Both the position numbers and the translations under genes were made by a program. From Macrostomum lignano (lineage: Eukaryota): a DNA stretch of 64,000 nucleotides. The notes below the pieces were generated by a model that was not told the DNA's origin, made no database searches, and worked only from the letters and a program-made list of their open reading frames with translations. The first letter of the stretch is position 1, and each line of letters starts with the position of its first letter. Where the stretch lies: NCBI GenBank assembly GCA_002269645.1, contig NIVC01001867.1, forward strand, positions 163,805-227,804, given 5' to 3'. Positions 1,697 to 24,818 of the stretch are shown in pieces.

Positions 1697-1706
1697 CAAT
1701 ATAAAA

Positions 1707-2681: not shown

Positions 2682-2765
2682 GCTCCTGGGGGGTGGGTCA
2701 GGACGCTAAAAACATAAAATTAAAAAACCAATAATTCAAATACTATATAAATTATATTCTATAAA

Positions 2766-6674: not shown

Positions 6675-7043
6675 AATCCGCGACCCTTCGGGGCGGAAAA
6701 AAACTAAAGCATGTAATTGTTTAAGCATAATATCCATTTCCATTTCATATTTTATTGAGCACCAATTATCCTCACAGTCGGCAGGGTAACTTAAACATTC
6801 TTTTATTTTTTTCCTAAGTACTTTTATTCTTCTAACAAGACGATCAATTTCAATTTCAATTACTGTTTCTGCATAAGCAATTGCTTTTTGTATAAAACGT
6901 TTTCTTTTATCTAATTTGTATCGGATGGGAAACATATCTTCATCATAATCACTATAAAATAAACTATTAATATAATTAAGTTCACGCTCTTTAGTGATAA
7001 GGATTTTTATTGTCTCCATTTTCTTATAAAAAAATTTAGTCAT
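6660..7043 (-). CDS. Polinton hypothetical protein (probable start at ATG 7019)
   Basis: 127-aa ORF in the gene-dense element, convergent with and overlapping the polB end. No recognised motif. Confidence 0.55.
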   Translation of the reverse strand: MTKFFYKKMETIKILITKERELNYINSLFYSDYDEDMFPIRYKLDKRKRFIQKAIAYAETVIEIEIDRLVRRIKVLRKKIKECLSYPADCEDNWCSIKYEMEMDIMLKQLHALVFFRPEGSRILSDK

Positions 7044-7314
7044 CTTCGTCAGCCTCCCAAACCGAAGCCAATTTTACAGTCCTATCACACTTTTTATTTT
7101 TTGGTTGTTTTAGTTTAAATTGCAACCCACCCTCCAGACTGTATTTCATAACAAACGCTTTTGGTTTATTAATAACTAAAACAGGAAAATTTTTAACATC
7201 ATCTCCGCTTAGACATAAAATTTTATGCCCATCCAATTGTAAAAATATCGATTGAAGTCCAATAAATTTAACCTGTCTCAAACATATAATATTATATTCT
7301 TTATTCTCCAACAT
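7036..7314 (-). CDS. Polinton hypothetical protein (possibly extends to ATG 7367 across a frameshift)
   Basis: 92-aa ORF abutting the next ORF. No recognised motif. Confidence 0.45.
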   Translation of the reverse strand: MLENKEYNIICLRQVKFIGLQSIFLQLDGHKILCLSGDDVKNFPVLVINKPKAFVMKYSLEGGLQFKLKQPKNKKCDRTVKLASVWEADEDD

Positions 7315-7393
7315 ATTGGGGTGACATAATTAATCACATTAGAATCAGTTTTGAACCAGCTTTCCATTTTTAATCTAAAAAAATAACAAAAAA

Positions 7394-7906
7394 ATGAAAG
7401 ACATTTACGAATGTAAAAAATGTAACGTGACTATGCATAGAGCTCAAACAGCAAGCGGAGATATATATCATATGTGCTATTCATGTTCTAAAATATATCA
7501 ATTTGAAAAAACAAAAAAGATTGAAAACTCATATTACTATTTTAAAAACACAATTTTAAGAAATCTTACAAGAGACATATCTGATCCAATTTTAATTCCC
7601 GGAAATAATGTTTATTTATATAATAACTTTTTCCATTTAAATAAAGGAGTGGGATTAAGTTCGAAAGACTCCGAAAGGATTTTAATTTTAGTTGGATATT
7701 ATTTTAATTTTCTTATTCGAGAGAATACAAAGTTTATAAGGATAGGTAACATACCTAACGAAATGTTACTGAAAAAGTCGTTGGAATTTTTATGTATTGA
7801 TAAAAAATTTAAACCTAGGATTACAAGAGAATTACCACTTTGGGAAGAATATATAACGTATGCGTTAGAAAAACTAAACAACATTAAGTTCTACACCACT
7901 ACCTGA
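7394..7906 (+). CDS. Polinton hypothetical protein, 170 aa, N-terminal CxxC...CxxC
   Basis: A-rich ATG context. CKKC...CYSC could bind zinc. Confidence 0.55.
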   Translation: MKDIYECKKCNVTMHRAQTASGDIYHMCYSCSKIYQFEKTKKIENSYYYFKNTILRNLTRDISDPILIPGNNVYLYNNFFHLNKGVGLSSKDSERILILVGYYFNFLIRENTKFIRIGNIPNEMLLKKSLEFLCIDKKFKPRITRELPLWEEYITYALEKLNNIKFYTTT

Positions 7907-8470
7907 TCGCCGGCTTTGTACCCCAGTACCAATAGTTTCGGGTTCGTAAATACCTAATGTTTCTATAGGTGGAGCTTTGGGTTTATCGAGTCTCAACTCT
8001 TTTAATTCCATATCGGTAAAAGTTTCAACATCTAAAATTCTATTTCGATCTTTTAAATATTTTTCGTATAATTCCACCGCGGTTGATAATTCATGAATTG
8101 TTATCTCTCCGTCATCCAATATTTTTTGCACATATAAATATAACTGATTTTTATATTGTTTAGCAATATCTCTTAATGATTTATATTTATCCTTTCTTTT
8201 TTTAAGATATAATTTAATTGCTAAAAGTATTGATAAGTTTCTGATCATTTCAAAACCTGATATTGAGCCAATTGAAATACCTAAAAATAATTGAGATAAA
8301 TTAAGAGTTGGAATAGATTGTAAAATACCTAAAACGATTACACATAACATTGATAAGCTTCCAAATCCAATATTGAAAAAATCCATATTTCTGATATGGT
8401 TTGAAACTCTTCTTACTTTTTTGGTATATAAATCATAATCATAGTTAATACGATCAACATTACTTAACAT
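7874..8470 (-). CDS. Polinton membrane-associated protein (two hydrophobic helices)
   Basis: Hydrophobic segments FFNIGFGSLSMLCVIVLGIL and LFLGISIGSISGFEMIRNLSILLAIKLYL, then KKRKDKY...ILDDGEITIHEL. This pattern resembles a recurrent Polinton accessory protein. Confidence 0.65.
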   Translation of the reverse strand: MLSNVDRINYDYDLYTKKVRRVSNHIRNMDFFNIGFGSLSMLCVIVLGILQSIPTLNLSQLFLGISIGSISGFEMIRNLSILLAIKLYLKKRKDKYKSLRDIAKQYKNQLYLYVQKILDDGEITIHELSTAVELYEKYLKDRNRILDVETFTDMELKELRLDKPKAPPIETLGIYEPETIGTGVQSRRSGSGVELNVV

Positions 8471-8840
8471 GTGACCTTGCGTTGGTTAAAATGGTCACGT
8501 TCCCTTTTATCTGCTTCAGATACCGACATTTTCGTCTATTTTTAATAGCACCAAAATGAATTCCCGCGCTCTTTGGGTATTTGCCCGAGCTTAATAGGTA
8601 TTGTATTGGAGTGATTCTTTCTTTTTTCTCCCATTTAAATCCAATTTTCCAAAACTCTTGAAGTATAATATGATTTTTTAATAGTTTAATTAATTCTTGA
8701 AGCTTCTTGTTATCCTGAACATTTACAGTACTAAATAAAAATTTGGTATGAGATTTGAATGTTTTTATATTTGATTCTTGTTTAGGAATAGGAATAATAA
8801 CATTATTTTGCCGCATTGATGGTGTTCTACTAAAAGCCAT
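8460..8840 (-). CDS. Polinton hypothetical basic protein, 126 aa
   Basis: TATAAAATG start context. Its stop overlaps the next ORF start. Confidence 0.5.
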   Translation of the reverse strand: MAFSRTPSMRQNNVIIPIPKQESNIKTFKSHTKFLFSTVNVQDNKKLQELIKLLKNHIILQEFWKIGFKWEKKERITPIQYLLSSGKYPKSAGIHFGAIKNRRKCRYLKQIKGNVTILTNARSHVK

Positions 8841-8855
8841 TTTATATATAAATAT

Positions 8856-10787
8856 TTAAGGTATTTCGGTTTGTGGCCGTTCCAAATATGCGGTCGCAGC
8901 AAAATCATATCCTGCTGATGTGCTACCACAAACGGCTGCACCACGAATAAAATGTGCAGCATCCGATCCTCCGGTTCGAGCACCAAAACCCATAAGTGTT
9001 CCCGTTTTATCTAAATCTCCCCAAGTTCCGCTATCATATGTAAAAAAGTTTTGCCCAATTAGCGTATATGTATTAGCTGATACATTGTATGTGCTTATTT
9101 GATACCAAACTCTTTGATTTAAAATATTAATTTCAAAAAGATGCCAATCGCCGTTATCAATATTAGCATAGGTTATAGTTTGATCTGCGTCATTAAGAAC
9201 ATCATTACGAACTGTTGCTCCGTCTGATTTTATATTGCTCCAAACAACCCCAACTCTATCATGCCATTCACTCGCAAACACAATCAAGCCGGCGCGGGTT
9301 GTTAACCCGGATCCAAATTCACTTGTTGGACGTTCGTGACAATATGCATAAAACCAAACCGCATCAGCACCACTTCCTGTAGCATTAGCAACTCGGAAAT
9401 AGAAGGAGGCGGAGATATTACGAAAATGGGTGAAATTAAATTGCAACGCTCCAGACTGACCACTTGCTTCATCAGTAATTCTAGCACCATTTTGATAATC
9501 AATATAAGTAGCGTTACCAACAAAACTTCCTGTTGGAAAAATATCGCCGGCGGTGGTTGGGTTTTGATATCCAGTCCAATTGCAAATTACAGGCTCGTAC
9601 AAAGCGGCATCGATTGCAGGTATTCCATCCAATTTTATTTTATCGTTAAAAGACATTCGGCCATCCGCCGTTTGTGTTACTCGCGTATCAACATAACCTT
9701 TAGTAACAACAGAACTGTTATTGTTTATAGTAGAGATATTAGTAATTGTATTACCTCCCATATCAATTGATTGATTAACCACTCCCAAATTTAAATCAAG
9801 AATTGTAAACGTCTGTCTATAAATCTGGAAGGTTGACAGACCCGGGTTGGTTGAACCCGAGGTTGATGTAAGACAGAACAATCTGAAATATGAATATGTT
9901 TTATCAAAATTTTGTGTGACATTAATTGTTTGAGTTGAGTTATTTATTGCTACAGAACTATCCGCAGGTATTAATACGTCCCAACTTGTATTGTCATTAC
10001 TTCCCTCAAATCGCCATGATGCTGGGTGCTCGGTTGAAGGTGATGGCCTACCACGTAAATCAATTTTATAACACATTATTGCGGAAGGGCATTGGACTTG
10101 AATCCAATAATCGGTTTGAGTATTATTTGTTGCCCAATCTGTTGAATCATTTCCATCAAACGCTTTCCAACTTGCAAAATCAGTTGTATTAAATGCAGTG
10201 CTTGCGGTTATTGCAAAACCATTTCCACTCCAATCTGCCATGGTAGGTACGTGTCCGGTTTCAACCGTTTGGAATCGATCCTGCTTTAAGGCTCCACCTC
10301 CAACTAAATTATCAACTTCGGTTTTGGTATAGGAATCAGTTATATCTCTTTTTAAATTTAGGGAATTATCAACTTCAGTTTTGGTATAGGAATCAGCAAC
10401 ATTCCGTTTTAAATTTAGGGAATTATCAACTTCGGTTTTGGTATAAGAATCGGCCGTATTGCGTTTTAAATTTAATGAATCATCTATTTGAGTTCGAGAA
10501 TAAGAATCAGTTATATCTCTTTTTAAATTTAACCCATTGTCAACCTCTGTTTTTGTATATGAATCGGCTACGTTCCGTTTTAAATTTAGGGAATTATCTA
10601 TTTGAGTTTTGGTATAGGAATCTGCAACATTTCTTTTTAAATTTAGTTTAGTATCAACTTCACTTTTTTTATAACCTTCATCTTCATTAATATATCGGTT
10701 ATCTCCGAATGTAACACTTATTCCACCAGAAGTACCACCACCAGTACTTGATGTTCCGTTCCATGAGGGTGTTCCAGAAAATAACAT
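8856..10787 (-). CDS. Fibre/receptor-binding-like protein: six 19-aa tail repeats, discoidin (F5/8C)-like domain, fibre-type linkers, C-terminal L-lectin/ConA-like domain
   Basis: LNLKRNVADSYTKTEVDNS x6; WKAFDGNDSTDW...WRFEGSND...YSYFRL; DMGGNTITNI...VTKGYVD; ADGRMSFNDKIKLDGI; GARITDEASGQSGAL...GSGADAVWF. Confidence 0.7.
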   Translation of the reverse strand: MLFSGTPSWNGTSSTGGGTSGGISVTFGDNRYINEDEGYKKSEVDTKLNLKRNVADSYTKTQIDNSLNLKRNVADSYTKTEVDNGLNLKRDITDSYSRTQIDDSLNLKRNTADSYTKTEVDNSLNLKRNVADSYTKTEVDNSLNLKRDITDSYTKTEVDNLVGGGALKQDRFQTVETGHVPTMADWSGNGFAITASTAFNTTDFASWKAFDGNDSTDWATNNTQTDYWIQVQCPSAIMCYKIDLRGRPSPSTEHPASWRFEGSNDNTSWDVLIPADSSVAINNSTQTINVTQNFDKTYSYFRLFCLTSTSGSTNPGLSTFQIYRQTFTILDLNLGVVNQSIDMGGNTITNISTINNNSSVVTKGYVDTRVTQTADGRMSFNDKIKLDGIPAIDAALYEPVICNWTGYQNPTTAGDIFPTGSFVGNATYIDYQNGARITDEASGQSGALQFNFTHFRNISASFYFRVANATGSGADAVWFYAYCHERPTSEFGSGLTTRAGLIVFASEWHDRVGVVWSNIKSDGATVRNDVLNDADQTITYANIDNGDWHLFEINILNQRVWYQISTYNVSANTYTLIGQNFFTYDSGTWGDLDKTGTLMGFGARTGGSDAAHFIRGAAVCGSTSAGYDFAATAYLERPQTEIP

Positions 10788-10854
10788 TTTTTACTGTCTA
10801 TTTTATAGAGTCTAAAATCGCCCCGTAGGGTCGCGGACTCCGTCCGATCGAACC

Positions 10855-11295
10855 TTAGGTTCGCATGCTTTGCATGATCATCTTAAATACTTCGGGGGTT
10901 TCCTTCGAGTTATTAATTTTATATAAAAAATACAACGCAGCCTGTCCGCAATAACTTTTATCAAAGGTTTGAAACTGTTCGTGATAATCTCCACATAAAC
11001 GATTTTTAGTATGATTAAATTTGTCTTTTATTTCCTGTAACGGAGGAAGCGCGTATGAATCAAAAAAATAAACAAGTTTTGGTTTTGAATAAACTGCTGA
11101 CCAATGAACACCATTTTCTTTTGTTGTTTCAATATTAACAATGAAAGATCCATATCTTGGTAAGTCTTTTATCTCATCCCGCATAACACATCTGAATGGT
11201 TTTAATTTTAACTGCCTCGCCCAATTTGTTAATTCGATATTGCTTGTTGTGTCTGTTCCATATCTTTGTTTGAACAACTGCCAATTCATGGTCAT
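10855..11295 (-). CDS. Adenain-like (C5/Ulp1-fold) cysteine maturation protease
   Basis: IVNIE...GVHW...YFFDSY...QFQ...SYCG gives the His-Asp-(Gln)-Cys catalytic set typical of Polinton PRO. Confidence 0.92.
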   Translation of the reverse strand: MTMNWQLFKQRYGTDTTSNIELTNWARQLKLKPFRCVMRDEIKDLPRYGSFIVNIETTKENGVHWSAVYSKPKLVYFFDSYALPPLQEIKDKFNHTKNRLCGDYHEQFQTFDKSYCGQAALYFLYKINNSKETPEVFKMIMQSMRT

Positions 11296-11296
11296 T

Positions 11297-11470
11297 TTAT
11301 GTTCCTGAAAAACTCTTGGTTTTAGTTAGTTTCGTAGGTGTGGGTTTTAATAGTTCCTTTCGGATTTTTTCTGCTTGTAATTGTTTCAATTTTGTTAGTT
11401 CGATTTCATAATTATCCTTTGCGTTTTGAACTTTTTCCGTTTGTTTTTTTAAAGCATTGTTGTTACCCAT
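11297..11470 (-). CDS. Small ORF absent from the track (57 aa, MGNNNALKKQ...), coiled-coil-like
   Basis: Fills the gap between the minor capsid and protease genes exactly. TAAAAATG start context like its neighbours; TAA at 11297-11299. Confidence 0.5.
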   Translation of the reverse strand: MGNNNALKKQTEKVQNAKDNYEIELTKLKQLQAEKIRKELLKPTPTKLTKTKSFSGT

Positions 11471-11480
11471 TTTTACAGTA

Positions 11481-12266
11481 CTAAACCTGTTTTATACGTA
11501 AAATTATTGTTATTGACTGCCCACCAAAACTTATTAATCTATCGCTTTCATCTACGATCCTAATATAAATTGATTGAACGCTATATTGATTTAAAGGATA
11601 ATATATTGGGGTTTGGGGTGCAACAATCATTTTCTCTCCAATTGGAACAGCAAGAAACGGGATTGAATAAATAATTCCACGTTGAACCAAAACTCCGTTA
11701 TCGTCTGTTATATAACCACCGTTTGAAATGTCGGTTGTTATATTAATTGTATTTACTCCACCCTCTATATTTCCAACTGTATCACCGGTGCTTGATGTGG
11801 TAACTATTCGGGAATTAAATCCAAGTATGGTTCTGAGTGAATTTGCAATTGTGAAATCAACCTGATATCCGGATTCGAGTGATAGTGTGAATCTTCCAGA
11901 CGGTAAATCAACACCTATAACAATTGCTCCTGCTACCCAATCTCCATTAGCTGTTAATTCTCCTTCTATATAAGCATTCAAATCAGTATAGCTATACGCA
12001 CCCGGGCTAACACTAAATGTTGTCCAATTGGCTCCGGAATCTTTAGAATATCTAAATTGATTATTTGTTGCATTAATTAATTGAGGCATGTTAAAAACCG
12101 AAAATAATATCAAACCAATTTGATAACTTAGGCTTTGATCAAGTTGTAATGGATCGCGCAATTGAATCCGTTGCTCGCTGGTTGTCATTATAAACTGTAA
12201 TGTTGTACTAAATTTTGAATTAGTTCGATCTACCAATTGTTTTATAGTATTTAAATTTGTAGTCAT
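11481..12266 (-). CDS. Minor capsid protein (penton-like, single jelly roll), probable start MTTNL at 12266
   Basis: Located between ATPase and protease. Motifs LRTILGF, VNTINITTDI, IYSIP...P..PIYYPL..YSVQSIYIRIVDESDRLISFGG..ITIILRIK are typical of Polinton minor capsid proteins. Confidence 0.85.
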   Translation of the reverse strand: MTTNLNTIKQLVDRTNSKFSTTLQFIMTTSEQRIQLRDPLQLDQSLSYQIGLILFSVFNMPQLINATNNQFRYSKDSGANWTTFSVSPGAYSYTDLNAYIEGELTANGDWVAGAIVIGVDLPSGRFTLSLESGYQVDFTIANSLRTILGFNSRIVTTSSTGDTVGNIEGGVNTINITTDISNGGYITDDNGVLVQRGIIYSIPFLAVPIGEKMIVAPQTPIYYPLNQYSVQSIYIRIVDESDRLISFGGQSITIILRIKQV

Positions 12267-12300
12267 TTTTATAGTGGGGAAATCGTGCCATAGGCACGAA

Positions 12301-13092
12301 CTAAGTCTCTTCTTCCTCATTATCTTCTTTTATCAGATCTCTTAAGATTCGATTTTTCCTTTCTAACCTAGGGTTGATATATATATGTTTGTATTGGCTA
12401 TCTTCCCAAATTTTTTTACACAAGCTTTTAAATGGTTTTGTATCCAATCCAGGATTAAATCTAGCGTGTATATTTTGTAAATCATAATTATCTAAATCAA
12501 ACATTACACAACAACTTGCATTCTTTTTTATAATCGATTCTAATTCTCTAAAGGACTGTGTTAGATAAAAAGCTCCGATTCCATCTCCTCTACCACTAAC
12601 AAAAATTTCCTTTTGCAATTCTTGATCACCGTCATTAATACAATCATCAAAAATAATTAGTGTTTTATCATTTTTTGGAATTTGATCATAGCCTAATCGG
12701 GTTGATACTCTAACAGTTGGGGCTCGTTCGGTGATGTTTTCTGGTTCGAACCTTTGTTCGCGGACTCGTCCGACCTTCTGCCATTTTTTACATAAATCCT
12801 CAATGTCATCGAGTGTAAATCGCGGTTCGTCATCATCCTCATATTGCTCATATGCTCTTAACATTCTAAACAAGACATCTTTTTTTAATTTGTTTTTTAA
12901 TCCATGTTTAAGAAATTCATAATATTTTATTCTAGGTTTATTAGTATAAATTATTAAATTATTATAGTCTAGCATTCCATCGGTTGTTAACAGGTCATAA
13001 ACAAAGTGTGTTTTTCCTTTACCCGACCCACCAATTACTAAACAAAGAAAAGGATCATTTGGAAATATTTTATTGTGTTTTGCTTTTACCAT
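12301..13092 (-). CDS. Genome-packaging ATPase (A32/FtsK-HerA family)
   Basis: Walker A GGSGKGKT, Walker B LIIFDD, and GRGDGIGAFYLTQS...IKKNAS. Confidence 0.93.
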   Translation of the reverse strand: MVKAKHNKIFPNDPFLCLVIGGSGKGKTHFVYDLLTTDGMLDYNNLIIYTNKPRIKYYEFLKHGLKNKLKKDVLFRMLRAYEQYEDDDEPRFTLDDIEDLCKKWQKVGRVREQRFEPENITERAPTVRVSTRLGYDQIPKNDKTLIIFDDCINDGDQELQKEIFVSGRGDGIGAFYLTQSFRELESIIKKNASCCVMFDLDNYDLQNIHARFNPGLDTKPFKSLCKKIWEDSQYKHIYINPRLERKNRILRDLIKEDNEEEET

Positions 13093-13203
13093 TTTTTAAG
13101 TAAATAATTTAAAGTGGGGCGACGGTCGGAGACCTGCACTCATTTTACAATGGTGCGTCTCGAACAACCGTGCCATCAGCTTTAGCAATTGACAAATATT
13201 CCT

Positions 13204-14616
13204 CTAGAAACAATACGTGGGCGTCGATTGCTGATTACCGGTTTTATTAATCTCTAACATATAATTAAGTCCAATATTGGCTATGTTTTCTTTCTGTGCC
13301 GTTAGATCATAAACAACCACTGGATGGATGTTTAGAAACTCTGTGGGTGTATACTGAGGGACGGCATATGCTTCATTTTTGGCATAATCGTGATAATATT
13401 TTATAAAATCATTAACATCATTATTTGCAATATTTAGATTAAGAGGATCTTTAACCGGATAATATTGATCATCAACCTGCAGGCGGATATTCTGAACATT
13501 AAACTCGTTAATTGCAGCAACTGCGTTGTCTGTTGCGGTAGCTGCTTGTGCTGCTATGTCACCCGATTGAAGCCAATATAAATCCCCATTTGCTCTTTTA
13601 CTCCTTCTGTTTGTTATCTTAAACCAAACAAAAATATATCTCACCCGACGTTTTGATGTCAATATTTGCCACTGGAATGAATCCTGATTGTTATTAATGG
13701 TTCGCATAAAGTGTCTACGATTCAAATAAAATATTTCCTGATCATGCGTTAACTGATTATCGATGTGTTTTAAAAGTGGGGCTGTTACCTCAATAGTTGG
13801 TACGACTAATTGAATTGAATCTATACGAACTGCTATATCGGTTGAAATTGAGGTTCCATAAAGTATCCTAGGCTGATATCCACCAGATATTTGCAACTGT
13901 ATCCCAAATTTTAATCCTTTCCATACCCGATTTGGTGAGAAAAACCCAAATAGTGGAAAGATTGAAAAGTCCTGCTCATATGCTGTTGCTGTGGTTAAAA
14001 CCGCGACTGGGAATTTATTCTGACGATCTATAAAACCAGTATTAATATCTTTTGTATTAGTCATAGTGGTTACAACTGGAACTATGTTTGTATTAAGGTA
14101 AACAATTAGCGCTGCAGTATCTGCACCGGCTGCGTTTTGTACATTAGGGAAAACTACTGCTTGACCGTTACCTTTATCCGGCATCCACCCAACATTATCA
14201 CCAACTTGTTTTGATAAATAAGTATAATTTAAATGTTTCAAAACTCCATTAATCTCTGCGGGGTTTGATGATGTCTCAACCTCAGCACCATTAACAGTTA
14301 GTTGAGCTTGGGAAAAGCATTTATAAAACCAATCATTTTCAATTATTATTCCGGATCGATCTGCGATATCTCCGGCTGCAAGAGCAGTTCCATCATTTCT
14401 AGTATACAACCATCTAACGCGGAAAAACGCATTTTTCATATCCAATATAGTGTTGGTTGCGCCGATGTCAAAAGTTACCGTTCCAGTAGTAAAGTTATTT
14501 GAATTATCACTTGTTGGTAGGGTATAATTTAAATCTCTTGCTCTGACCTCATTAATATACTGTCGGTGCTTTTTGAAATGAAATTTATCACTCCACATAG
14601 TTTTTGTTTCAGCCAT
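13204..14616 (-). CDS. Major capsid protein (double jelly roll, hexon-like); true C-terminus probably extends to 13145 via a frameshift near 13228
   Basis: 470 aa next to the ATPase. Motifs FRVRW...ENDWFYKCFSQAQLTVNGAEVE, RYIFVWF and VVYDLTAQKE fit a Polinton MCP. Confidence 0.85.
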   Translation of the reverse strand: MAETKTMWSDKFHFKKHRQYINEVRARDLNYTLPTSDNSNNFTTGTVTFDIGATNTILDMKNAFFRVRWLYTRNDGTALAAGDIADRSGIIIENDWFYKCFSQAQLTVNGAEVETSSNPAEINGVLKHLNYTYLSKQVGDNVGWMPDKGNGQAVVFPNVQNAAGADTAALIVYLNTNIVPVVTTMTNTKDINTGFIDRQNKFPVAVLTTATAYEQDFSIFPLFGFFSPNRVWKGLKFGIQLQISGGYQPRILYGTSISTDIAVRIDSIQLVVPTIEVTAPLLKHIDNQLTHDQEIFYLNRRHFMRTINNNQDSFQWQILTSKRRVRYIFVWFKITNRRSKRANGDLYWLQSGDIAAQAATATDNAVAAINEFNVQNIRLQVDDQYYPVKDPLNLNIANNDVNDFIKYYHDYAKNEAYAVPQYTPTEFLNIHPVVVYDLTAQKENIANIGLNYMLEINKTGNQQSTPTYCF

Positions 14617-14650
14617 TTTTTTAAGTTAAAAAAGTTTTTTATGTTAAAAA

Positions 14651-15337
14651 ATGAGTCAATTTATGGACGTTGATGGAGAGTTAGCGATTTATAAAGAGAA
14701 GCAAAGATATTCTGATTTTGTTAGAAATTTACAAAAAAGAAAGTTAGGAATACAATTAGCGGGTGAAAGATTTGCTGCTCCTTTTGTTAATCCTATTACT
14801 GGGAAAATTAGTGAACTAGAAAAAACAGATAAAGATCTTCTGGAAAAAATTGCTAAAAATACTGAGCCAAAAGAGGATGAACTTTTAGATGAGCCGCCTG
14901 CTTATGATGTTGATCTAGCACAATTGAGAATTGCAGAGATTAGACGTGCAGAGATTAGGGCTGCAGAAAGGGGTGAAGAAGTTAAACAATTTCCAAGAGA
15001 TGCGCCACGTAGTATTGCTGCGACAGATTTAGGTAATAATTATCGAATTGGTAACGTTGATAAAGATCGAAATGAACTATATAGAGAATTGGGCGGAGCA
15101 TATAGAATTATTACTAACCCTAGGGTTAAGTTTAACCCTGATTTTTATACTAGGGATGAATTAGTAAGTGCTAAAATTTTTTATGATGATTTAGGAGTAG
15201 GAGCTGTTAAAAATACCAACTTGTATAAAAGGATTGTTGATTCTATAAATAACAAGCCGGCTGTTGGTGAAGGATTTAAAACTCCGCGAAAACTTGTTTT
15301 AGCTGCCGCGAAAGCTGCTGGACATACTGGTGTTTAA
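14651..15337 (+). CDS. Polinton hypothetical protein, 228 aa
   Basis: TTAAAAAATG start, divergent from MCP. C-terminal VGEGFK motif resembles the other putative protease sites. Confidence 0.7.
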   Translation: MSQFMDVDGELAIYKEKQRYSDFVRNLQKRKLGIQLAGERFAAPFVNPITGKISELEKTDKDLLEKIAKNTEPKEDELLDEPPAYDVDLAQLRIAEIRRAEIRAAERGEEVKQFPRDAPRSIAATDLGNNYRIGNVDKDRNELYRELGGAYRIITNPRVKFNPDFYTRDELVSAKIFYDDLGVGAVKNTNLYKRIVDSINNKPAVGEGFKTPRKLVLAAAKAAGHTGV

Positions 15338-15364
15338 TTAATTGTTAAATTTATTTTTTATAAA

Positions 15365-15964
15365 ATGGAAACTAAAAAGATTTGTAGTCGATGTAAAGAA
15401 GAGAAACCAATGACTAAAGATTTTTTTAGATGGAGAAATGATTCAAAAAAATTTAGAAATGATTGTCGATCTTGTGAGAAAGTTATATCAAAACTGTGGA
15501 ATAAAAACAATAAAGAATATATAAAAAATAAATATCACACTGATGAAAATTACAAACTTATTATCACCTCACGAAATAGAATAAATCAACTATTAAAATC
15601 AAATAATGCTCGAAAAAATAATCATACTATTGATTACCTTGGTTGCTCAATTGAATTCTTTATTGATTGGTTAAATTTCACAAAACATTATTATGTTCCA
15701 AAAGACTATGGTGGTGCTTTACATATTGATCATTTTATTCCTGCTTCTTCATTTAATTACAAAGACGAAGATCATATGAAAAAGTCTGAACATTGGACAA
15801 ATAAAAGATACTTAGCTGCTATTGATAATAAAACTAAATTTGTTAAACAACCAACAATTGAAGAATTTGCAAAACAATTGGTGCTATCATGTATTTTTAA
15901 GGCTATAAAAAATGAGCAATCATGCGACGCATGCGAACCGAAGGTTCGACCAATTAGTATTTGA
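15365..15964 (+). CDS. Free-standing HNH (beta-beta-alpha-Me) endonuclease with N-terminal C4 zinc finger; putative homing endonuclease
   Basis: CSRC...CRSC, then YLGCSIEFF...LHIDHFIP...HWTN...IDNKTK. This is the HIDH/N/N pattern of HNH endonucleases common in large DNA viruses. Confidence 0.85.
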   Translation: METKKICSRCKEEKPMTKDFFRWRNDSKKFRNDCRSCEKVISKLWNKNNKEYIKNKYHTDENYKLIITSRNRINQLLKSNNARKNNHTIDYLGCSIEFFIDWLNFTKHYYVPKDYGGALHIDHFIPASSFNYKDEDHMKKSEHWTNKRYLAAIDNKTKFVKQPTIEEFAKQLVLSCIFKAIKNEQSCDACEPKVRPISI

Positions 15965-17552
15965 AGGAGGATTGTTAGATGTTCAAAAAGGATTAACAAG
16001 CTTACCGAGCGTTTTTACTACTGGGAGGTATACAAATGAATTACACATCCCGTCTTACAACTTCGCAGGTTAACCAGTGGCCTGAGTGAGGAAGGCAATG
16101 TCCTTGCTAGTCACTATTTGTGGCGACATCTTCAAATTGCGTGAAACCCGTCATACAGCTTCAAGTACCACTTCAATTGAGAAATCTTTTGAAGGAACAG
16201 AGGTAACTCCTCTTCCCAACGGTAACAAGCTTGAAGACACGGTGGCAATGCGCAGCCAAGCTCCTAAGTATTTTAAATATAAGGAGAAGGTTCAGAGAGC
16301 AGACGGAGATGGGCGGTAATCATCGCCGCTTAAGGTGTGCTCCAGCCTCATTCGAAAGATTGAGGGTAAACTGCCGGGGACTCGCTTAGATTTGAGATTA
16401 AATCCTGACAATACTCCAAAATCTGATTCAATTCCAATAAATGGTATTGACTGGTTAGCATATTACCATGACTTAGCATACAGAGATGCTGACAAGAACC
16501 CGCCCGAGGAAGCATTAAGATTAAAACATGATGCCGATCAAAAAATGATTCAAGGATTAGATAACTTGCAGGGATTATCGGTAGGGCAAAGATTAACTAG
16601 GTGGATGGTTAAAAAGATCTTGCAGTCTAAAGTTAAATTTGGTTTGGGAATTAATTACAACCAACATGGAAATAATTGTGTCGAGTGTTTATTATTAAGT
16701 GGTGGTGGGTTAAGTTCTGATGAGGCAAAGATTCTTCATAAAGAATATCGAAAACCGAAATTTTATAGAAAAATCATGAACTTCAAAAAGAATGAAATTT
16801 GGTATGCTGATTTAATGTCGATGCCAAATGATAATGGATATAAATATATCTTAACAATATTAGATGGTTTTACTCGCTACGCGTGGGCTGTTCCTTTAAA
16901 ATCCAAAAAGGGAGAGGAGGTTGCTGCTGCTTTTAGAAGTCTTGGAGAAAAAAGTGACCGGTTGTGTGTTGATGAGGGAAAAGAATTTTACAATCCTCAT
17001 ATGTATAAATTATATCATTTTGAAAAAGGACAAGAAAGGAAAAAAGACGCGAATGGGGAGTATATTAATAAAATTTATTCTATTTATGGAGAAAGTAAAA
17101 ACGCATTAATAGAAAGATTTAATCGAACTTTAGGTAAGAAATTGTGGTTTCAGTTTAGTCTTAATGGTAACCAAAAGTGGGTAAAAATATTACCAGACGT
17201 TGTGAAAGATTATAATAACTCATATCATTCAGCTATCGTTCCTTCGGAACGCGGACTTCGTACGATAAAGATGACTCCTCAACAAGCTTATAACAATCCT
17301 GAAAACGTTAAAGTTACTTTTGGAAAATTTGAAAAAAATAAAAAGAAATCTTTTAAGGTTGGTGATTCTGTTTATATCTATAAATGGAAAGATAAGTTTG
17401 AAAAAGGAAGAAAAGGATATTGGAAGATAAGTGAGAAATTTACTATCAGTAAAGTTTTAAATACCAATCCTACAACCTATATAATTGCTGATAAGGACGG
17501 TGAAGAAATATTGGGTTCTTTTTATGAGAACCAGATAATGTCTGCGAACTAA
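15912..17552 (+). CDS. int: Parvovirus-type PLA2 fused to retroviral-like integrase; two exons (15912-16070, 16374-17552) separated by a group I intron; 445 aa
   Basis: CTATAAAAAATG at 15912. Splicing restores ELHIPSYNFAG|PGTRLD...PINGIDWLAYYHDLAY (PLA2 Ca-loop and HD dyad). The integrase core follows: WYAD, VDEGKEF, IERFNRTL (DDE), with C-terminal FKVGDSV...GSFY. Confidence 0.9.
16071..16373 (+). ncRNA. Group I self-splicing intron, subgroup IC1-like, 303 nt, no internal endonuclease
   Basis: 5' exon ends in U16070, paired with G16080 in P1 (CAGGU/GCCUG). P3 CAUCUUC/GGAGAUG. P4 UGCGUG/UGCGCA. P5abc with GGUAACAAG A-rich bulge and GAAA loop. P6 with CCUAAG/UAAGG receptor. P7 G(A)GAGCA/UGCUCC. 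P9.0 AG/CU. P9 GAAA hairpin. Terminal omega-G16373. Confidence 0.92.
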
Positions 17553-17562
17553 GTTCAAACAG

Positions 17563-17787
17563 TTACTTAAGACAACATGGTAGTAAATTTTTTATTACAA
17601 ACAAAAACAATATTATTACTATTATTGTTACTAATATTATTATTGACATTTGTTCAACTGTTATCAAACTTAAATTTTCATTAAGTTCATTAATTGGAAC
17701 ATTTCCGATGTAGGAATAGTTTACCTTCATTTTTTTATATATATTTTTCATAATAAATGTTGTTTCTGTTATAGAATAATAATTCAT
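17563..17787 (-). CDS. Small Polinton protein with one C-terminal TM helix
   Basis: TTTAAAAAATG start. Hydrophobic IIILVTIIVIILFLFVI followed by PCC. Confidence 0.5.
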   Translation of the reverse strand: MNYYSITETTFIMKNIYKKMKVNYSYIGNVPINELNENLSLITVEQMSIIILVTIIVIILFLFVIKNLLPCCLK

Positions 17788-17802
17788 TTTTTAAATATTT
17801 TT

Positions 17803-18117
17803 TTACATAAAAATTTCAATTTCATTCTCAGAATCACTGGTTTCATATGAGCTATTTGTTGATTCGGAATCTGTTGATCTAACCTCCCAATCATCCGAAT
17901 TTAAATAATCTCCAAGTTGAAATATTAACTCTCCCTCTTGTTCTAATTCATACATCTCATCTAGCTCTAATGGATAAAGCTTTAGGTCATGCTTGTCGTC
18001 ATATTTTAAATAAACTTCATCAATTATTCCATTCAAAATATGTTGTTTTATTATCTCTGCATTTTTAGCAACAGTCTCAAAAGTATCACTAACAGAAAAG
18101 GTGTAAACTCGGGTCAT
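17803..18117 (-). CDS. Small acidic Polinton protein, 104 aa
   Basis: CTAAAAATG start just inside the right TIR. Asp/Glu/Ser-rich. Confidence 0.55.
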   Translation of the reverse strand: MTRVYTFSVSDTFETVAKNAEIIKQHILNGIIDEVYLKYDDKHDLKLYPLELDEMYELEQEGELIFQLGDYLNSDDWEVRSTDSESTNSSYETSDSENEIEIFM

Positions 18118-18125
18118 TTTTAGTA

Positions 18126-18478
18126 ACAGAAAAAGCCCCTTCGCGCCTGCGGCGCGTGCGAGGGGTTATAGAGATTTGGAAGTGTTAGAAGTGTTGGGGA
18201 GTGTTGGGTTGTGTAGTAGTAGGTAAAACGACGCTTACAGATCAGACCTTTTTTAATGGCCGTTTATAAGGTTCCAGAGGGGGGACACGAGGGGAGTGTT
18301 GGGGAGTGTTTGGAAGTGTTGGGAATGATTTTTATTGTTAGGGGGTTTTTAGATGTCTTTTTGTGTTAATGGTGATTAGATGTGTTTTTTTATTTACCCC
18401 CCGTGTCCCCCCTCTAGACCCTTAAAACGGTCATTAAAAAAGTGCTCTGGGTCTAGAAGCGTCGTTTTACCTACTACT
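18126..18478 (-). repeat. Right terminal inverted repeat (353 bp)
   Basis: Reverse complement of 759-1111. Confidence 0.95.
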
Positions 18479-18683
18479 GCCGCAGTTGCTCACACTGCAC
18501 CGCTGCCGCATCTATCTGGCAGGGTCCCGGTGTCTCTTGGATGATCATATTTGACGCCTATTAATATCTATTATAGCTTTGAGGTTTGAGTATGACCAGA
18601 CTGCTGTCACAGTACACTGGTAATTCTTCAGTTCGTAACAGATTTTAAACAAGAACTTTGTGGTGGATTCAAGTCAACTAACC

Positions 18684-23336: not shown

Positions 23337-24818
23337 ATGCGAGCAAGTCAAGCAGTCACCGTCGCTCACATCGCGGTGCTGCTGACGATGCGCTGCTGCC
23401 TGAAGGTTATGGAGTACCAGTTCATCACACTGGCCGCAGCAAGCTCCAATGCCAGCACCGACACCGAGGGAGTGGCGGAGTCGGCCTCGCCGATGTCCTG
23501 GATGTACACCTGCCGCTTTTTGCTAGGCGCTCTGGGCGGCCTGGTGGCCTGCTGGATCGGCCACGTGCGCACCCTGCAGCTGGGCGGCTGCGTCCTGCTG
23601 GCATCGGCTGGCTCCATGGCCGGCGCCGTGTACACAGACCAGTGGAGCCCGGACTCTGGCGCCGCGCTGACCGCCTGCGCCCTCATGCTGGTCTACAACG
23701 GCCTGGTGATCCCCAACGTGATGTACGCAGTGCTGAGCAAGCGGACGAGGCCGCAGCGCCGCACGGTGCTCTGCGCGCTCGTCTACATGTCCTCCGCGGC
23801 CGGCCTGTTTGTGGGCATCCAGGTGCAGCACCTGCTGACCAACCCGAGCGTTGGCAAACACTGCAGCCTCGTCTGGTTGGCCTTCGCCCTCGCCTTTGCC
23901 GCGCTCGCTATCCTGGCGCTGCCGCGGCTCGACGCAGCAGCCGCGATGGCACCGAGCTCCGGGCAGCTCGACACGGCTCCGCCGCCGCCGTTCCCGAAGC
24001 TGCTGTGCAACTGCGGGCACGTCCTTCTGCCGACTTGGAGCCGTCTGAAGCGCAGCTGCATCGTCTTCGGGACGCTGATCCCCTTCCTGGTGGGTCTGTG
24101 CGATGACCGGTCCTCGGCCTTCAACGCGCAGCGGGCGCTGCAGCCGCTCATCGCCAACTCCAGCGGAGGTAACTCCGGAAATGACCGATTGAGCGATTCG
24201 CTGGATAGTGCGCTGCTGGCAGTCAGCCTGGTGGCCGTCAACGGAGGTCTGGTGGTCGCCGCCTGCTGCCTGCGCGGTCGCAGACGTCTCCCAGTGCAGC
24301 CGCGGCTCCTGGCGGGCATCGTCATGGAGGCGGCCCTGGAGCTGGCGCTGGCGGCAGTCAGTGGCGTTGGGCTGGCCGACCCTGTGGCCGTGTCCGCGGT
24401 GTACACCGCTTCTACAGTGGTGGACGCGACCGCCGCCGCGCTGACGATGGTGGCCGCCTACGAGCTGATGGACAGCTTTGAGCGGGACGCGGCAATGCCG
24501 CTGATTTTCGGCATCATGCTGACGGTGTGGGGTCTCGCGAACCTGGCCAGTCGCTGTATTGTCACGATCTGCCGCCGCCTGCCGCCCGACAACCCGATCC
24601 TGCAGCCGAGCGCCGGCAAGCCGCCTCTGCTGTTCGTCTACCACTCGCTGCTGCTGGCGCTGCTGCTGCTGAGCCTCGCCTTCTGGCGGCTGTTCGCCCT
24701 GCGGCTTGCCCGCTCGCTGCAGGTTATATATGAGGACGAGGTGCCAGAAGCTTCCGCCGGCCCCGTCAACGATAGCGACGGGGAGAACCGGCCGCTGCTG
24801 GACCCCGCCATCAACTGA
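23337..24818 (+). CDS. Intronless multi-pass membrane protein, divergent MFS (POT/SLC15-like) transporter, 493 aa
   Basis: Long GC3-rich ORF with about 11-12 hydrophobic helices and an acidic dileucine-type C-terminus (DGENRPLL). Family assignment rests on topology only. Confidence 0.65.
   Translation: MRASQAVTVAHIAVLLTMRCCLKVMEYQFITLAAASSNASTDTEGVAESASPMSWMYTCRFLLGALGGLVACWIGHVRTLQLGGCVLLASAGSMAGAVYTDQWSPDSGAALTACALMLVYNGLVIPNVMYAVLSKRTRPQRRTVLCALVYMSSAAGLFVGIQVQHLLTNPSVGKHCSLVWLAFALAFAALAILALPRLDAAAAMAPSSGQLDTAPPPPFPKLLCNCGHVLLPTWSRLKRSCIVFGTLIPFLVGLCDDRSSAFNAQRALQPLIANSSGGNSGNDRLSDSLDSALLAVSLVAVNGGLVVAACCLRGRRRLPVQPRLLAGIVMEAALELALAAVSGVGLADPVAVSAVYTASTVVDATAAALTMVAAYELMDSFERDAAMPLIFGIMLTVWGLANLASRCIVTICRRLPPDNPILQPSAGKPPLLFVYHSLLLALLLLSLAFWRLFALRLARSLQVIYEDEVPEASAGPVNDSDGENRPLLDPAIN

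What the first reader, a model, noticed from the sequence alone, without database searches (positions are those of the whole stretch)
15912..16420. Self-splicing group I intron inside a Polinton integrated in an animal nuclear genome, splitting the PLA2 calcium loop of the PLA2-integrase gene
Seen in sequence: exon 1 (ATG 15912) ends ...HIPSYNFAG at U16070 and is followed at once by an in-frame TAA. Removing 16071-16373 gives NFAG|PGT, the GPG calcium loop of parvovirus-type PLA2, in frame with HD and the integrase. The removed 303 nt fold into a full catalytic core: P1 with U.G at the splice site, P2, P2.1, P3, P4, P5abc, P6 with a tetraloop receptor, P7, P8, P9.0, P9 and omega-G. P7 is G(A)GAGCA/UGCUCC instead of the usual GACUA/UAGUC, a fully compensatory change that argues for selection on function. 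The boundaries are U|...G|, not GT-AG. Established: IC1 introns occur in protist/fungal nuclear rDNA and in chlorella viruses; animal group I introns are known from mitochondria of early-branching animals. Inference: to my knowledge (literature not searched) group I ribozymes are not described in animal nuclear genes or as Polinton cargo, so this may be a new route by which ribozymes enter animal genomes.
Basis: partly seen in the sequence, partly recalled or inferred. Interest (0 to 1): 0.95.

Follow-up and report, generated by a model that had tools for sequence, protein, structure and literature searches.

The report
Group I intron in flatworm Maverick
A structurally intact self-splicing-type RNA (group I intron) interrupts the integrase gene of a virus-like Maverick/Polinton element inserted in a Macrostomum-type flatworm genome; such ribozymes have been counted in protist relatives of these elements, but I found no report of one in an animal nuclear genome.

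Summary
Window 16071-16373 (303 nt) matches Rfam RF00028 at 65.9 bits against a gathering score of 50. It follows a U paired to G in P1 and ends in G. Exon 1 and exon 2 are exactly colinear with an intron-less relative (residue 32 | 33), so the intron splits the PLA2 glycine loop of a PLA2-rve integrase.

Eight further copies at the same codon boundary and seven related introns, some in giant-virus genes, gave a 13-sequence alignment. In it 95.4% of cells pair and 43 of 64 pairs carry compensatory changes, including the unusual P7. The window copy keeps 59 of 60 alignable pairs.

The carrier is a 17.7-kb element with perfect 353-nt inverted repeats and a 6-bp target duplication. A flanking gene is 87% identical to a Macrostomum lignano protein, so the host is an animal.

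New here: the HNH/Endo VII gene just upstream of exon 1 is homologous to endonuclease ORFs inside the same-site introns of relatives.

The novelty claim needs correcting. Rfam hits to group I introns in protist Polinton-like viruses were published in 2025. I found no report of the animal host, the insertion site or the endonuclease arrangement. Splicing itself is untested.

The parts
759..18478 (.). Integrated Maverick/Polinton element, 17,720 bp, GC 0.33 against about 0.53 in the right flank
   Evidence: TIRs and TSD; composition; gene content
753..758 (.). Left copy of the 6-bp target-site duplication GCCGCA
   Evidence: read directly
18479..18484 (.). Right copy of the 6-bp target-site duplication GCCGCA
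   Evidence: read directly
759..1111 (.). Left terminal inverted repeat, 353 nt, starts AG
   Evidence: 100% complementary to 18126-18478
18126..18478 (.). Right terminal inverted repeat, 353 nt, ends CT
2766..6674 (+). [quoted passage not shown]
   Evidence: nearest named homologues are Mya arenaria and Nasonia vitripennis 'DNA-directed DNA polymerase' proteins, 33-36% identity
12301..13092 (-). A32-type genome-packaging ATPase
   Evidence: PF04665, E 4.9e-7; 27% identity to the ATPase of L002
13204..14616 (-). Major capsid protein candidate (470 aa)
   Evidence: 22% identity, E 5e-8, over nearly its full length to the L002 protein annotated PF21738 DJR-like
15365..15964 (+). Intact free-standing HNH/endonuclease VII-family gene (199 aa). 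It overlaps the start of exon 1 by 53 nt and is a candidate homing endonuclease
   Evidence: phrog_1035 endonuclease VII, E 2.9e-11, and phrog_2255 HNH. Homologous to ORFs inside the same-site introns of L004 (51% over 100 aa, E 1e-29) and L010 (E 1e-18). Absent at this position in the intron-less locus L003
15912..16070 (+). Exon 1 of the PLA2-integrase gene (53 codons, ends ...HIPSYNFAG; last base U16070)
   Evidence: residues 22-53 align to residues 1-32 of intron-less P0001 at 72% identity
16071..16373 (+). Group I intron, 303 nt, no internal ORF, IC1-like architecture, phase 0, begins with an in-frame UAA
   Evidence: RF00028 at 65.9 bits; covariation; 59 of 60 alignable pairs intact
16078..16084 (+). 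Internal guide sequence (P1 3' strand UGGCCUG), pairing with exon/intron CAGGU|UA at 16066-16072; U16070.G is the wobble at the splice site
   Evidence: cmscan alignment. The guide co-varies with exon position -5: C-G in the window, L001, L010 and L011; U-A in L002, L004 and L005
16110..16124 (+). P2.1 hairpin, minimal here. In relatives its loop holds the endonuclease ORFs
   Evidence: read directly
16171..16194 (+). P5b with a GAAA tetraloop, part of the P5abc extension (16159-16236)
16261..16286 (+). P6a/P6b with CCUAAG...UAAGG. Most relatives have CCUAAG...UAUGG, which I recall as the tetraloop-receptor motif
   Evidence: the receptor role comes from general knowledge and was not tested
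16295..16301 (+). P7 5' strand G(A)GAGCA with the bulged A (guanosine-binding helix)
   Evidence: columns 224/284 are G-C in 13 of 13; the two variant pairs are compensated
16338..16343 (+). P7 3' strand UGCUCC
16373..16373 (+). Terminal guanosine (omega-G), last base of the intron
   Evidence: all same-site introns end in G immediately before CCN GGN (Pro-Gly)
16374..17552 (+). Exon 2: rest of the PLA2 domain (PGT...YYHDLAY...) fused to an rve integrase, through the stop codon
   Evidence: PF00665, E 1.6e-7; PF08398, E 0.034, below cutoff; 70% identity to P0001 from its residue 33
23337..24818 (+). Host gene (MFS-type membrane protein) that identifies the flank as Macrostomum-like
   Evidence: 87% identity, 100% coverage, E 1e-264, to M. 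lignano PAA65691.1

Best explanation
Window 16071-16373 is a bona fide, structurally intact group I intron with IC1-like architecture. It sits in phase 0 between the Gly and Pro codons of the glycine loop of the PLA2 domain, at the N-terminus of the rve integrase. The carrier is a recently integrated 17.7-kb Maverick/Polinton in a Macrostomum-type flatworm genome. Shown: it belongs to a ribozyme lineage that occupies exactly this site in at least eight other integrase genes from metagenomes, and other sites in giant-virus genes. Its helices are maintained by compensatory substitutions. Removing it would restore a protein that is contiguous in intron-less relatives. Inferred: the unspliced transcript stops after 53 codons. 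The RNA folds and uses a free guanosine bound in P7 to cut after U16070. The freed exon 1 then attacks after G16373, joining ...NFAG to PGT..., so that a full PLA2-integrase is made only from spliced RNA. Inferred with less certainty: the intron spreads or persists by homing. Relatives carry one of two endonuclease ORFs in the P2.1 loop, either an HNH/Endo VII type or an Eco47II-like type. In the window the intron has no ORF, but an intact HNH/Endo VII gene of the same family lies directly upstream of exon 1. The likely logic is that this nuclease cuts intron-less alleles at or near the insertion site when two elements share a cell. The intron protects its own copy by splitting the target.
For: Ribozyme identity: RF00028 at 65.9 bits against a gathering score of 50, full model. 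Structure under selection: 13-sequence alignment A2; RNAalifold finds 41 of 62 pairs with double changes. With the P3/P7 pseudoknot added, 95.4% of cells pair against 35-46% when slid, 43 of 64 pairs carry double changes against 7-15 when slid, and 0 of 500 shuffles reach the observed values. Window copy intact: 59 of 60 alignable pairs. Splice sites: U.G in P1, terminal G, and the guide sequence co-varies with the exon. Exon colinearity: exon 1 ends at P0001 residue 32 and exon 2 starts at residue 33. The intron-less locus L003 gives no Rfam hit. Same-site introns are in L001, L002, L004, L005, L006, L007 (partial), L010 and L011. Giant-virus relatives are L009 (RNA polymerase), L013, L008 and L012/L014. 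Endonucleases: the window ORF 15365-15964 hits phrog_1035 endonuclease VII, E 2.9e-11, and is homologous to the intronic ORFs of L004 and L010. The Eco47II-like ORFs of L001, L002 and L005 are 52% identical to one another. Element and host. The perfect TIRs imply a recent integration, which is consistent with a working integrase in the donor.
Against: No expression or splicing data were available, so catalysis is inferred from sequence alone. P10 pairing with exon 2 is weak in the window. P8 is shorter than in relatives, and the P6a motif differs by one base from the common form. One A.C mismatch lies in the P5a/P5b junction helix. Natural group I splicing from a Pol II messenger in an animal nucleus has, to my knowledge, no precedent. 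The target of the HNH protein is unknown, and it could be an unrelated selfish insertion. Intronic HNH copies in two relatives are disrupted (one frame change in L004, one in-frame stop in L010), so homing may be extinct in parts of the family. Neither the window's element nor its host gene was found by exact look-up in the assemblies on hand, so copy number and polymorphism in the host are unknown.
Confidence: 0.78

Rival explanations
1. The intron is a dead relic. The ribozyme no longer splices, or never splices in an animal nucleus. The integrase gene is then effectively truncated after 53 codons, and the element is a non-autonomous fossil.
For: No expression data. Weak P10, a shortened P8, a one-base variant of the P6a motif and a non-consensus P7 lower the Rfam score (65.9 bits against 100-105 bits for the giant-virus relatives).
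Against: 59 of 60 alignable pairs are intact, and the P7 changes are fully compensated and shared with L001. The guanosine-binding G-C pair and bulged A are retained, as are the U.G pair and the terminal G. Every long ORF of the element is open. The TIRs are 100% identical, so the insertion is too young for decay to be expected.
Confidence: 0.15
2. Assembly artefact or contaminant. The element belongs to a protist or environmental virus in the flatworm culture and was joined to flatworm DNA by mis-assembly, so there is no intron in an animal genome.
For: The closest integrase relatives (up to 70% identity) all come from metagenomes. Published group I introns in such elements are from protists. 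GC differs sharply from the flanks. The left flank held in the window is only 758 bp.
Against: A perfect 6-bp direct duplication, GCCGCA, brackets perfect TIRs with AG...CT ends, which is the signature of rve-mediated integration into this very sequence. A Macrostomum-type gene lies 4.9 kb from the right end on the same contig. The polymerase's nearest named relatives are from animals. A GC contrast between element and host is usual for these elements.
Confidence: 0.05
3. The intervening sequence is removed by the spliceosome or is not removed at all, and the integrase is translated from an internal start in exon 2.
For: The host is an animal with a spliceosome. A GU lies at 16069-16070.
Against: Read directly: the intron ends ...CUG, not AG. 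The only GU...AG choice near the borders (16069...16364) leaves an in-frame UAA. There is no AUG between the UAA and the PLA2 motifs; the ORF 16335-17552 starts at GUG inside the ribozyme. The borders coincide to the base with group I rules in nine independent loci.
Confidence: 0.02

Closest known systems
Group I introns in Polinton-like viruses integrated in protist genomes (Rfam survey in PMC12220804, 2025: Paulinella micropora 53, Rhodomonas lacustris cluster C3/Gossevirus 44, Desmodesmus armatus 2)
   Same: RF00028-type ribozyme carried by an integrated element of the Polinton kind with rve integrase, TIRs and 6-bp TSDs. The reported size is 309-376 bp. [quoted passage not shown]
   Different: Those hosts are protists, and the interrupted gene was left unannotated. 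No splice sites, covariation or endonuclease link were described. Here the host is an animal, the polymerase is of the animal Maverick type, and the gene and site are identified. I could not test whether the published introns occupy the same site.
Homing-endonuclease-bearing group I introns in giant-virus genes, such as the RNA polymerase genes of Bodo saltans virus (PMC5871332)
   Same: Same ribozyme lineage: L009 (RNA polymerase largest subunit), L013, L008 and L012/L014 share the P5b signature and 56-67% core identity with the window. Both insert in a conserved catalytic motif. Both show a mix of ORF-bearing 'parent' introns and ORF-less introns thought to depend on an endonuclease supplied in trans.
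   Different: Those are in large cytoplasmic viruses of protists. Here the carrier is a 17.7-kb integrating element resident in an animal chromosome, and the target gene is a PLA2-integrase.
Collaborative homing in phages: an ORF-less intron plus an adjacent free-standing endonuclease; F-CphI, a cyanophage S-PM2 free-standing endonuclease with an Endo VII motif (PMC6083498), and the psbA-intron case of Zeng et al. 2009 and Bonocora and Shub 2009 as cited in PMC11296320. That F-CphI is the psbA-site enzyme is my recollection, not stated in the text I read
   Same: An ORF-less group I intron with an intact Endo VII/HNH-family nuclease gene immediately beside the interrupted gene. Homologues of that nuclease lie inside the intron in relatives, which is the intermediate predicted by the Bonocora-Shub pathway.
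   Different: This is a eukaryotic virus-like element, not a phage. The cleavage specificity of the window's nuclease is unknown, and the direction of the move (into or out of the intron) is unresolved.
IC1 group I introns of nuclear rDNA in protists and fungi (Tetrahymena type), from general knowledge
   Same: The same helix set: P2, P2.1, the P5abc extension with a GAAA loop on P5b, a CCUAAG-type motif in P6a, and a GAAA loop on P9.
   Different: Those interrupt Pol I rRNA genes. This one interrupts a protein-coding gene, presumably transcribed by Pol II. Subgroup membership was not tested with subgroup models.
Group I introns of animal mitochondria (cnidarians, sponges, placozoans; e.g. PMC1762336, PMC5633667, listed)
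   Same: The only group I introns I know of in animals, and often associated with homing endonucleases.
   Different: Those are organellar. The present one lies in nuclear chromosomal DNA, inside a mobile element.

Membership tests
Group I intron (Rfam RF00028) | Covariance-model score at or above the curated gathering score | tested here: met
   65.9 bits against 50, full model 1-253. One scan of intermediate size missed it, which I take to be a filter artefact.
Group I intron (Rfam RF00028) | Conserved core helices P3-P8, including the P3/P7 pseudoknot, supported by covariation | tested here: met
   All 14 helices are 88-100% paired. 43 of 64 pairs carry double changes against 7-15 in slid controls, and 0 of 500 shuffles reach the observed values. 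The window keeps 59 of 60 alignable pairs.
Group I intron (Rfam RF00028) | 5' splice site after a U that forms a U.G wobble with the internal guide sequence in P1 | tested here: met
   U16070.G in the cmscan alignment. The guide co-varies with exon position -5 across loci.
Group I intron (Rfam RF00028) | Terminal guanosine at the 3' splice site | tested here: met
   G16373. All eight complete same-site introns in relatives also end in G before CCN GGN.
Group I intron (Rfam RF00028) | Guanosine-binding site in P7 (conserved G-C pair next to a bulged A) | tested here: met
   Columns 224/284 are G-C in 13 of 13, 225/283 are A-U in 13 of 13, and the bulged A is present. This is a sequence feature only.
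Group I intron (Rfam RF00028) | Removal restores the interrupted gene | tested here: met
   Exon 1 ends at residue 32 and exon 2 begins at residue 33 of the contiguous homologue P0001. The exons were analysed separately and not joined.
Group I intron (Rfam RF00028) | Protein-independent, guanosine-initiated self-splicing | not testable with these tools
   No expression or biochemical data were available.
Subgroup IC1 | P2 and P2.1, a P5abc extension with a tetraloop-receptor contact to P6, and a fit to subgroup-specific models | tested here: inconclusive
   The architecture is present, but no subgroup models or curated IC1 comparators were available in the tools.
Maverick/Polinton (Polintoviricetes) | [quoted passage not shown] | tested here: met
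   1302-aa ORF. Homologues are named DNA-directed DNA polymerase, and one carries PF03175.
Maverick/Polinton (Polintoviricetes) | Retrovirus-like (rve) integrase | tested here: met
   PF00665, E 1.6e-7, 31.9 bits against a cutoff of 32.6. 696 homologues have precomputed PF00665.
Maverick/Polinton (Polintoviricetes) | Long terminal inverted repeats and a 6-bp target-site duplication | tested here: met
   353-nt TIRs at 100% identity; GCCGCA on both sides.
Maverick/Polinton (Polintoviricetes) | Virion module: double jelly-roll capsid protein, penton protein, A32 ATPase, adenain-like protease | tested here: inconclusive
   The ATPase is met (PF04665). The capsid candidate shows only a distant match to a DJR-annotated protein (E 5e-8). 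The penton and protease candidates (11481-12320 and 10855-11295) have no significant hit.
Parvovirus-type phospholipase A2 domain (PF08398) | Profile match plus the glycine loop and His-Asp catalytic motif | tested here: inconclusive
   Exon 2 alone scores E 0.034, 14.9 bits against a cutoff of 23.9. Close homologues carry precomputed PF08398. ...YNFAG | PGT... and YYHDLAY are present by reading. I did not score a joined protein.
Homing endonuclease acting with an ORF-less intron (collaborative homing) | Nuclease-family membership, and homology to intron-encoded endonucleases of the same intron family | tested here: met
   phrog_1035 endonuclease VII, E 2.9e-11; tblastn to the intronic ORFs of L004 (E 1e-29) and L010 (E 1e-18).
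Homing endonuclease acting with an ORF-less intron (collaborative homing) | Cleavage of the intron-less allele at or near the insertion site, and biased inheritance | not testable with these tools
   Not testable by sequence analysis.

The most novel reading that the evidence does not exclude
A group I ribozyme is active in an animal nucleus. It would splice itself out of a Pol II messenger of a resident Maverick, so that production of the element's PLA2-integrase depends on RNA catalysis. The same intron/endonuclease lineage moves between giant viruses, protist Polinton-like viruses and animal Mavericks, giving a virus-borne route by which catalytic introns and homing endonucleases reach animal germlines.
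Probability: 0.4. Interest if true: 0.85.

Novelty: new member of a known kind. Interest (0 to 1): 0.68.

Why it matters
Group I introns are known from rDNA of protists and fungi, from organelles, bacteria and phages, and from giant viruses. In animals I know them only from the mitochondria of a few early-branching phyla. This case places an apparently functional one inside chromosomal DNA of a bilaterian animal, carried by a recently inserted virus-like element.

It also names the gene and the exact site that this intron lineage occupies in Polinton-type integrases, which the 2025 protist survey left unannotated. It links that lineage to giant-virus introns.

Within one family it captures three states: an empty site, an intron with an internal endonuclease gene, and an ORF-less intron with the same type of endonuclease gene beside it. 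That series is what models of how mobile introns form predict, and until now it has been documented in phages.

Practically, gene callers truncate these integrases at the intron. Single-pass cmscan surveys also miss some copies (and 91/93), so the phenomenon is probably under-counted.

Tried and rejected
- **Spliceosomal GT-AG reading:** rejected by reading. The 3' end is CUG, and the only nearby GU...AG choice leaves an in-frame UAA.
- **Exact look-up of window proteins** (capsid candidate, host gene) in public assemblies: nothing on record, so the source assembly and other copies could not be examined.
- **Integrase scan of IMG/VR with the single protein:** no confirmed relative.
- **Pfam on 30 flank ORFs:** only one EF-hand. 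Host identity came from one large protein search instead.
- **The HNH ORF:** no hit in Pfam or PDB sequences and only sub-cutoff noise in NCBIfam. PHROGs and tblastn to relatives' introns gave the answer.
- **The Eco47II-like intron ORFs:** only weak Pfam support (E about 6e-4, below cutoff) and nothing in PHROGs, NCBIfam or PDB. Their nuclease nature stays tentative. They are unrelated to the window's HNH ORF.
- **Rfam on L004-L006:** no hit, although the alignment shows they are homologous introns lacking P9.
- **Rfam 'evalue' scan of 700-18600:** returned nothing, contradicted, so I treat it as a filter artefact.
- **Other low-GC patches of the window:** no similarity to the element.
- **Minimum-free-energy folding of the single sequence:** uninformative (z = -1.66). 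The comparative analysis was needed.
- **Intron versus exon conservation:** the core is 72-79% identical against 61-66% for exon 2. This cannot separate horizontal spread from structural constraint.
- **Building a covariance model of my own:** not attempted, because the model would exceed the practical length limit.
Full report
**1. The observation**

An ORF starts at ATG 15912, runs 53 codons to ...ELHIPSYNFAG (last codon GGU, 16068-16070) and meets UAA at 16071-16073. From 16374 the same frame continues PGTRLDLRLNPDNTPKSDSIPINGIDWLAYYHDLAY... into an rve integrase core (PF00665, E 1.6e-7) and ends at 17552.

A scan of the whole window against Rfam gave one strong hit: RF00028, Group I catalytic intron, at 16061-16364 on the + strand. 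It scored 65.9 bits against a gathering score of 50, covered the full model and had E 1.7e-14. A local rescan gave the same 65.9 bits. One scan of 700-18600 in 'evalue' mode returned nothing. The same size-dependent loss happened with locus L002, which was missed and scored 59.4 bits. I therefore read as a speed-filter artefact and report it as such.

**2. Splice sites and the restored protein**

In the cmscan alignment, P1 pairs exon/intron CAGGU|UA (16066-16072) with UGGCCUG (16078-16084). This puts U16070 opposite G. The intron ends at G16373.

A search with exon 2 alone found 696 relatives, most with the architecture PF08398 (PLA2) plus PF00665. The closest, P0001 (70% identity), is contiguous across the site. 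Exon 1 residues 22-53 align to its residues 1-32, and exon 2 residue 1 aligns to its residue 33, with nothing missing or added. Its DNA (L003) has no intron hit. I analysed the two exons separately and did not build a joined sequence.

A spliceosomal reading fails. The 3' border is CUG, and the only nearby GU...AG pair leaves an in-frame UAA.

**3. The same site is occupied in other elements**

Six of the 70 best integrase hits start at or just before PGT. In all six the DNA shows an intervening sequence at the same codon boundary:

| Locus | Intervening sequence | Note |
|---|---|---|
| L001 | 835 nt | |
| L002 | 852 nt | |
| L004 | 922 nt | |
| L005 | 798 nt | |
| L006 | 339 nt | |
| L007 | partial | cut by the contig end |

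A pattern search with the conserved P5b stretch added L010 (1212 nt) and L011 (328 nt) from another metagenome. All follow ...AGGU, and the eight complete ones end in G.

The guide sequence co-varies with the exon. In the window, L001, L010 and L011 the exon is cAGGU and the guide GCCUG. In L002, L004 and L005 the exon is uAGGU and the guide GCCUA. P2 also shows compensated changes.

**4. Structure under selection**

I aligned thirteen cores, from the P3 5' strand to the P7 3' strand (A2). RNAalifold recovered P4, P5, P5a, P5b, P5c, P6, P6a, P6b, P7 and P8 unaided, with 41 of 62 pairs showing changes on both sides.

Adding P3 as a pseudoknot partner of P7 gave the following:

| Measure | Observed | Partners slid by 1-3 columns |
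|---|---|---|
| Cells paired | 95.4% | 35-46% |
| Pairs with compensatory change | 43 of 64 | 7-15 |
| Shuffles reaching the observed values | 0 of 500 | not applicable |

The window and L001 have GAGCA/UGCUC where the other eleven sequences, like the Rfam consensus, have GACUA-type/UAGUC-type strands. That is two pairs changed on both sides. The G-C and A-U pairs next to the bulged A are invariant.

The window's own copy forms 59 of its 60 alignable pairs. The helix set is that of IC1 introns: P2, P2.1, P5abc with GAAA on P5b, CCUAAG...UAAGG in P6a, and GAAA on P9. I could not test subgroup membership with subgroup models.

**5. The carrier and the host**

Perfect 353-nt inverted repeats lie at 759-1111 and 18126-18478. 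The ends are AG...CT, and a 6-bp direct repeat GCCGCA flanks them. The 17,720-bp element has GC 0.33 against about 0.53 in the right flank.

It encodes:
- a 1302-aa protein-primed polymerase with an internal Endonuclease_7 domain;
- an A32-type ATPase;
- a capsid candidate;
- a repeat-plus-discoidin protein;
- the PLA2-integrase.

All long ORFs are open. The polymerase's nearest named relatives are from the clam Mya arenaria and the wasp Nasonia vitripennis (33-36% identity), and most of the Nasonia ones carry the same Endonuclease_7 domain. The best hit overall, from a metagenome, is only 38% identical, so this is a divergent lineage.

The flanks are GC-rich, gene-poor and full of mini- and microsatellites. 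ORF 23337-24815 is 87% identical over its full length (E 1e-264) to Macrostomum lignano PAA65691.1. The host is therefore a Macrostomum-type flatworm. The 87% figure fits a sister species or a diverged homeologue.

**6. Relatives of the intron outside integrases**

The P5b pattern also found related introns that score 53-105 bits:
- In L009 the intron splits a giant-virus RNA polymerase largest subunit, between ...NSDFDGD and MNMHVAQS....
- In L013 two introns follow a Cys-rich ORF of a small IMG/VR contig.
- L008 has two introns, and L012/L014 lie on 132-kb and 100-kb IMG/VR contigs.

Core identity to the window is 72-79% for same-site introns and 56-67% for these. The lineage is thus shared between giant viruses and Polinton-type elements, with the PLA2-site introns forming their own branch.

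The integrase is better conserved between the window and L002 (47%) than the capsid (22%) or the ATPase (27%). The elements that share this site are therefore not one close family.

**7. Endonucleases**

The long same-site introns carry ORFs in the loop of P2.1, as read.
- L001, L002 and L005 share an ORF of about 200 aa (52% identity between L001 and L002). Its Pfam similarity to the Eco47II restriction endonuclease family is weak (E about 6e-4, below cutoff).
- L004 and L010 instead carry an ORF with a CxxC...CxxC finger and an H-x-D-H...N motif. Both copies are disrupted: one frame change in L004 and one in-frame stop in L010.

The window's intron has no ORF. However, the intact 199-aa ORF at 15365-15964 lies directly upstream and overlaps the exon 1 start by 53 nt. 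It hits phrog_1035 'endonuclease VII' (E 2.9e-11) and an HNH family. It is homologous to the intronic ORFs of L004 (51% over 100 aa, E 1e-29, plus the finger) and L010 (27% over 205 aa, E 1e-18).

In the intron-less locus L003, the homologue of window ORF 14651-15337 abuts the integrase directly. L003 is therefore empty for both the intron and the nuclease gene.

This arrangement, an ORF-less intron plus a neighbouring free-standing nuclease of the intronic type, matches 'collaborative homing' in phages. A free-standing Endo VII-motif homing endonuclease, F-CphI, is known from a cyanophage. It also matches the trans-homing proposed for ORF-less introns of Bodo saltans virus. That the window's nuclease targets the intron-less site is my inference.

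**8. What is already known**

PMC12220804 (Microbiome, 2025) scanned integrated Polinton-like viruses of protists with Rfam. It lists RF00028 hits in Paulinella micropora (53), Desmodesmus armatus (2) and Rhodomonas lacustris cluster C3 (44). [quoted passage not shown] That description fits an exon 1 like the one here, but I could not check the site.

A 2026 preprint notes phospholipase domains in about half of the protist 'Gosseviruses' and in many animal Maverick-Polintons, and it does not mention introns. Searches combining group I intron with Polinton, Maverick, adintovirus, polintovirus or virophage, and Macrostomum with Polinton or Maverick, found no description of such an intron in an animal-genome element. 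The library does not hold all journals.

**9. Verdict**

The ribozyme itself is an ordinary member of a known class, and carriage by Polinton-like elements is already on record for protists. I therefore rate it a new member of a known kind.

To my knowledge four things are new:
- the animal nuclear setting;
- the identification of the gene and the exact site;
- the kinship with giant-virus introns;
- the free-standing versus intronic endonuclease series.

Splicing in the animal, and homing, remain inferences.

Noticed in passing
window 26449-26731: Fourteen tandem copies of a 16-nt unit run into a tRNA-like hit (RF00005, 33.5 bits, 26662-26731). The repeat unit equals the 5' end of that tRNA-like sequence, as if a tandem array had grown out of a tRNA- or SINE-type head.
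   Followed up: no
window ~34000-36400 and ~62100-64000: Two further low-GC patches (about 0.30) lie in the GC-rich flank. They have no long ORFs and no nucleotide or translated similarity to the element, and their nature is unknown.
   Followed up: partly
window 18685-62062: The host flank is unusually dense in micro- and minisatellites (43 TRF rows; periods 4-121). Several arrays have extreme GC skew.
   Followed up: no
window 8856-10787 (-): An element protein of 643 aa has N-terminal 19-aa repeats (57-nt tandem period at 10307-10667) followed by an F5/8 type C (discoidin) domain, E 1.2e-11. It is a candidate fibre or receptor-binding protein.
   Followed up: no
window 2766-6674 (+), residues 487-538: The protein-primed polymerase contains an Endonuclease_7 domain that most of the Nasonia vitripennis homologues also carry. 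It appears native to this polymerase type rather than a recent insertion.
   Followed up: partly
window 1707-2681 (+): This ORF has a glycine/alanine-rich hydrophobic middle and a weak, sub-cutoff match to adenovirus core protein X (PF05829, E 1.4e-4). Adintovirus papers describe PLA2 fused to a pX-like domain, whereas here the PLA2 is on the integrase instead.
   Followed up: no
window 21280-21669 (+): An exon-like ORF with an EF-hand (PF13405, E 1.5e-7) lies in the host flank.
   Followed up: no
L009 1981-2291: A related group I intron (104.7 bits) splits a giant-virus RNA polymerase largest-subunit gene between ...NSDFDGD and MNMHVAQS.... The contig carries an NCBI WGS-style name, JACCDO010770855.1.
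   Followed up: partly
L013 4133-4483 and 4623-4923; L008 465-753 and 891-1183: Two related introns lie close together in each of two loci. This is reminiscent of the 'parent and offspring' introns described for Bodo saltans virus.
   Followed up: no
L002 1-8500: The intron-bearing element of L002 (GC 0.25-0.30) abuts about 8 kb of gene-poor DNA with GC 0.36-0.44 on a 47.6-kb contig. It is probably integrated in an unidentified eukaryote too.
   Followed up: partly
L004 2082-3003, L005 2206-3003, L006 687-1025: These same-site introns end only 7-8 nt after the P7 3' strand, so they lack a P9 hairpin. They escape Rfam detection although their cores are about 76% identical to the window's.
   Followed up: partly
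window 16061-16364; L002 9678-10014: Detection by cmscan depended on how much sequence was searched (against 91; against 25). Single-pass surveys will under-count these introns.
   Followed up: yes
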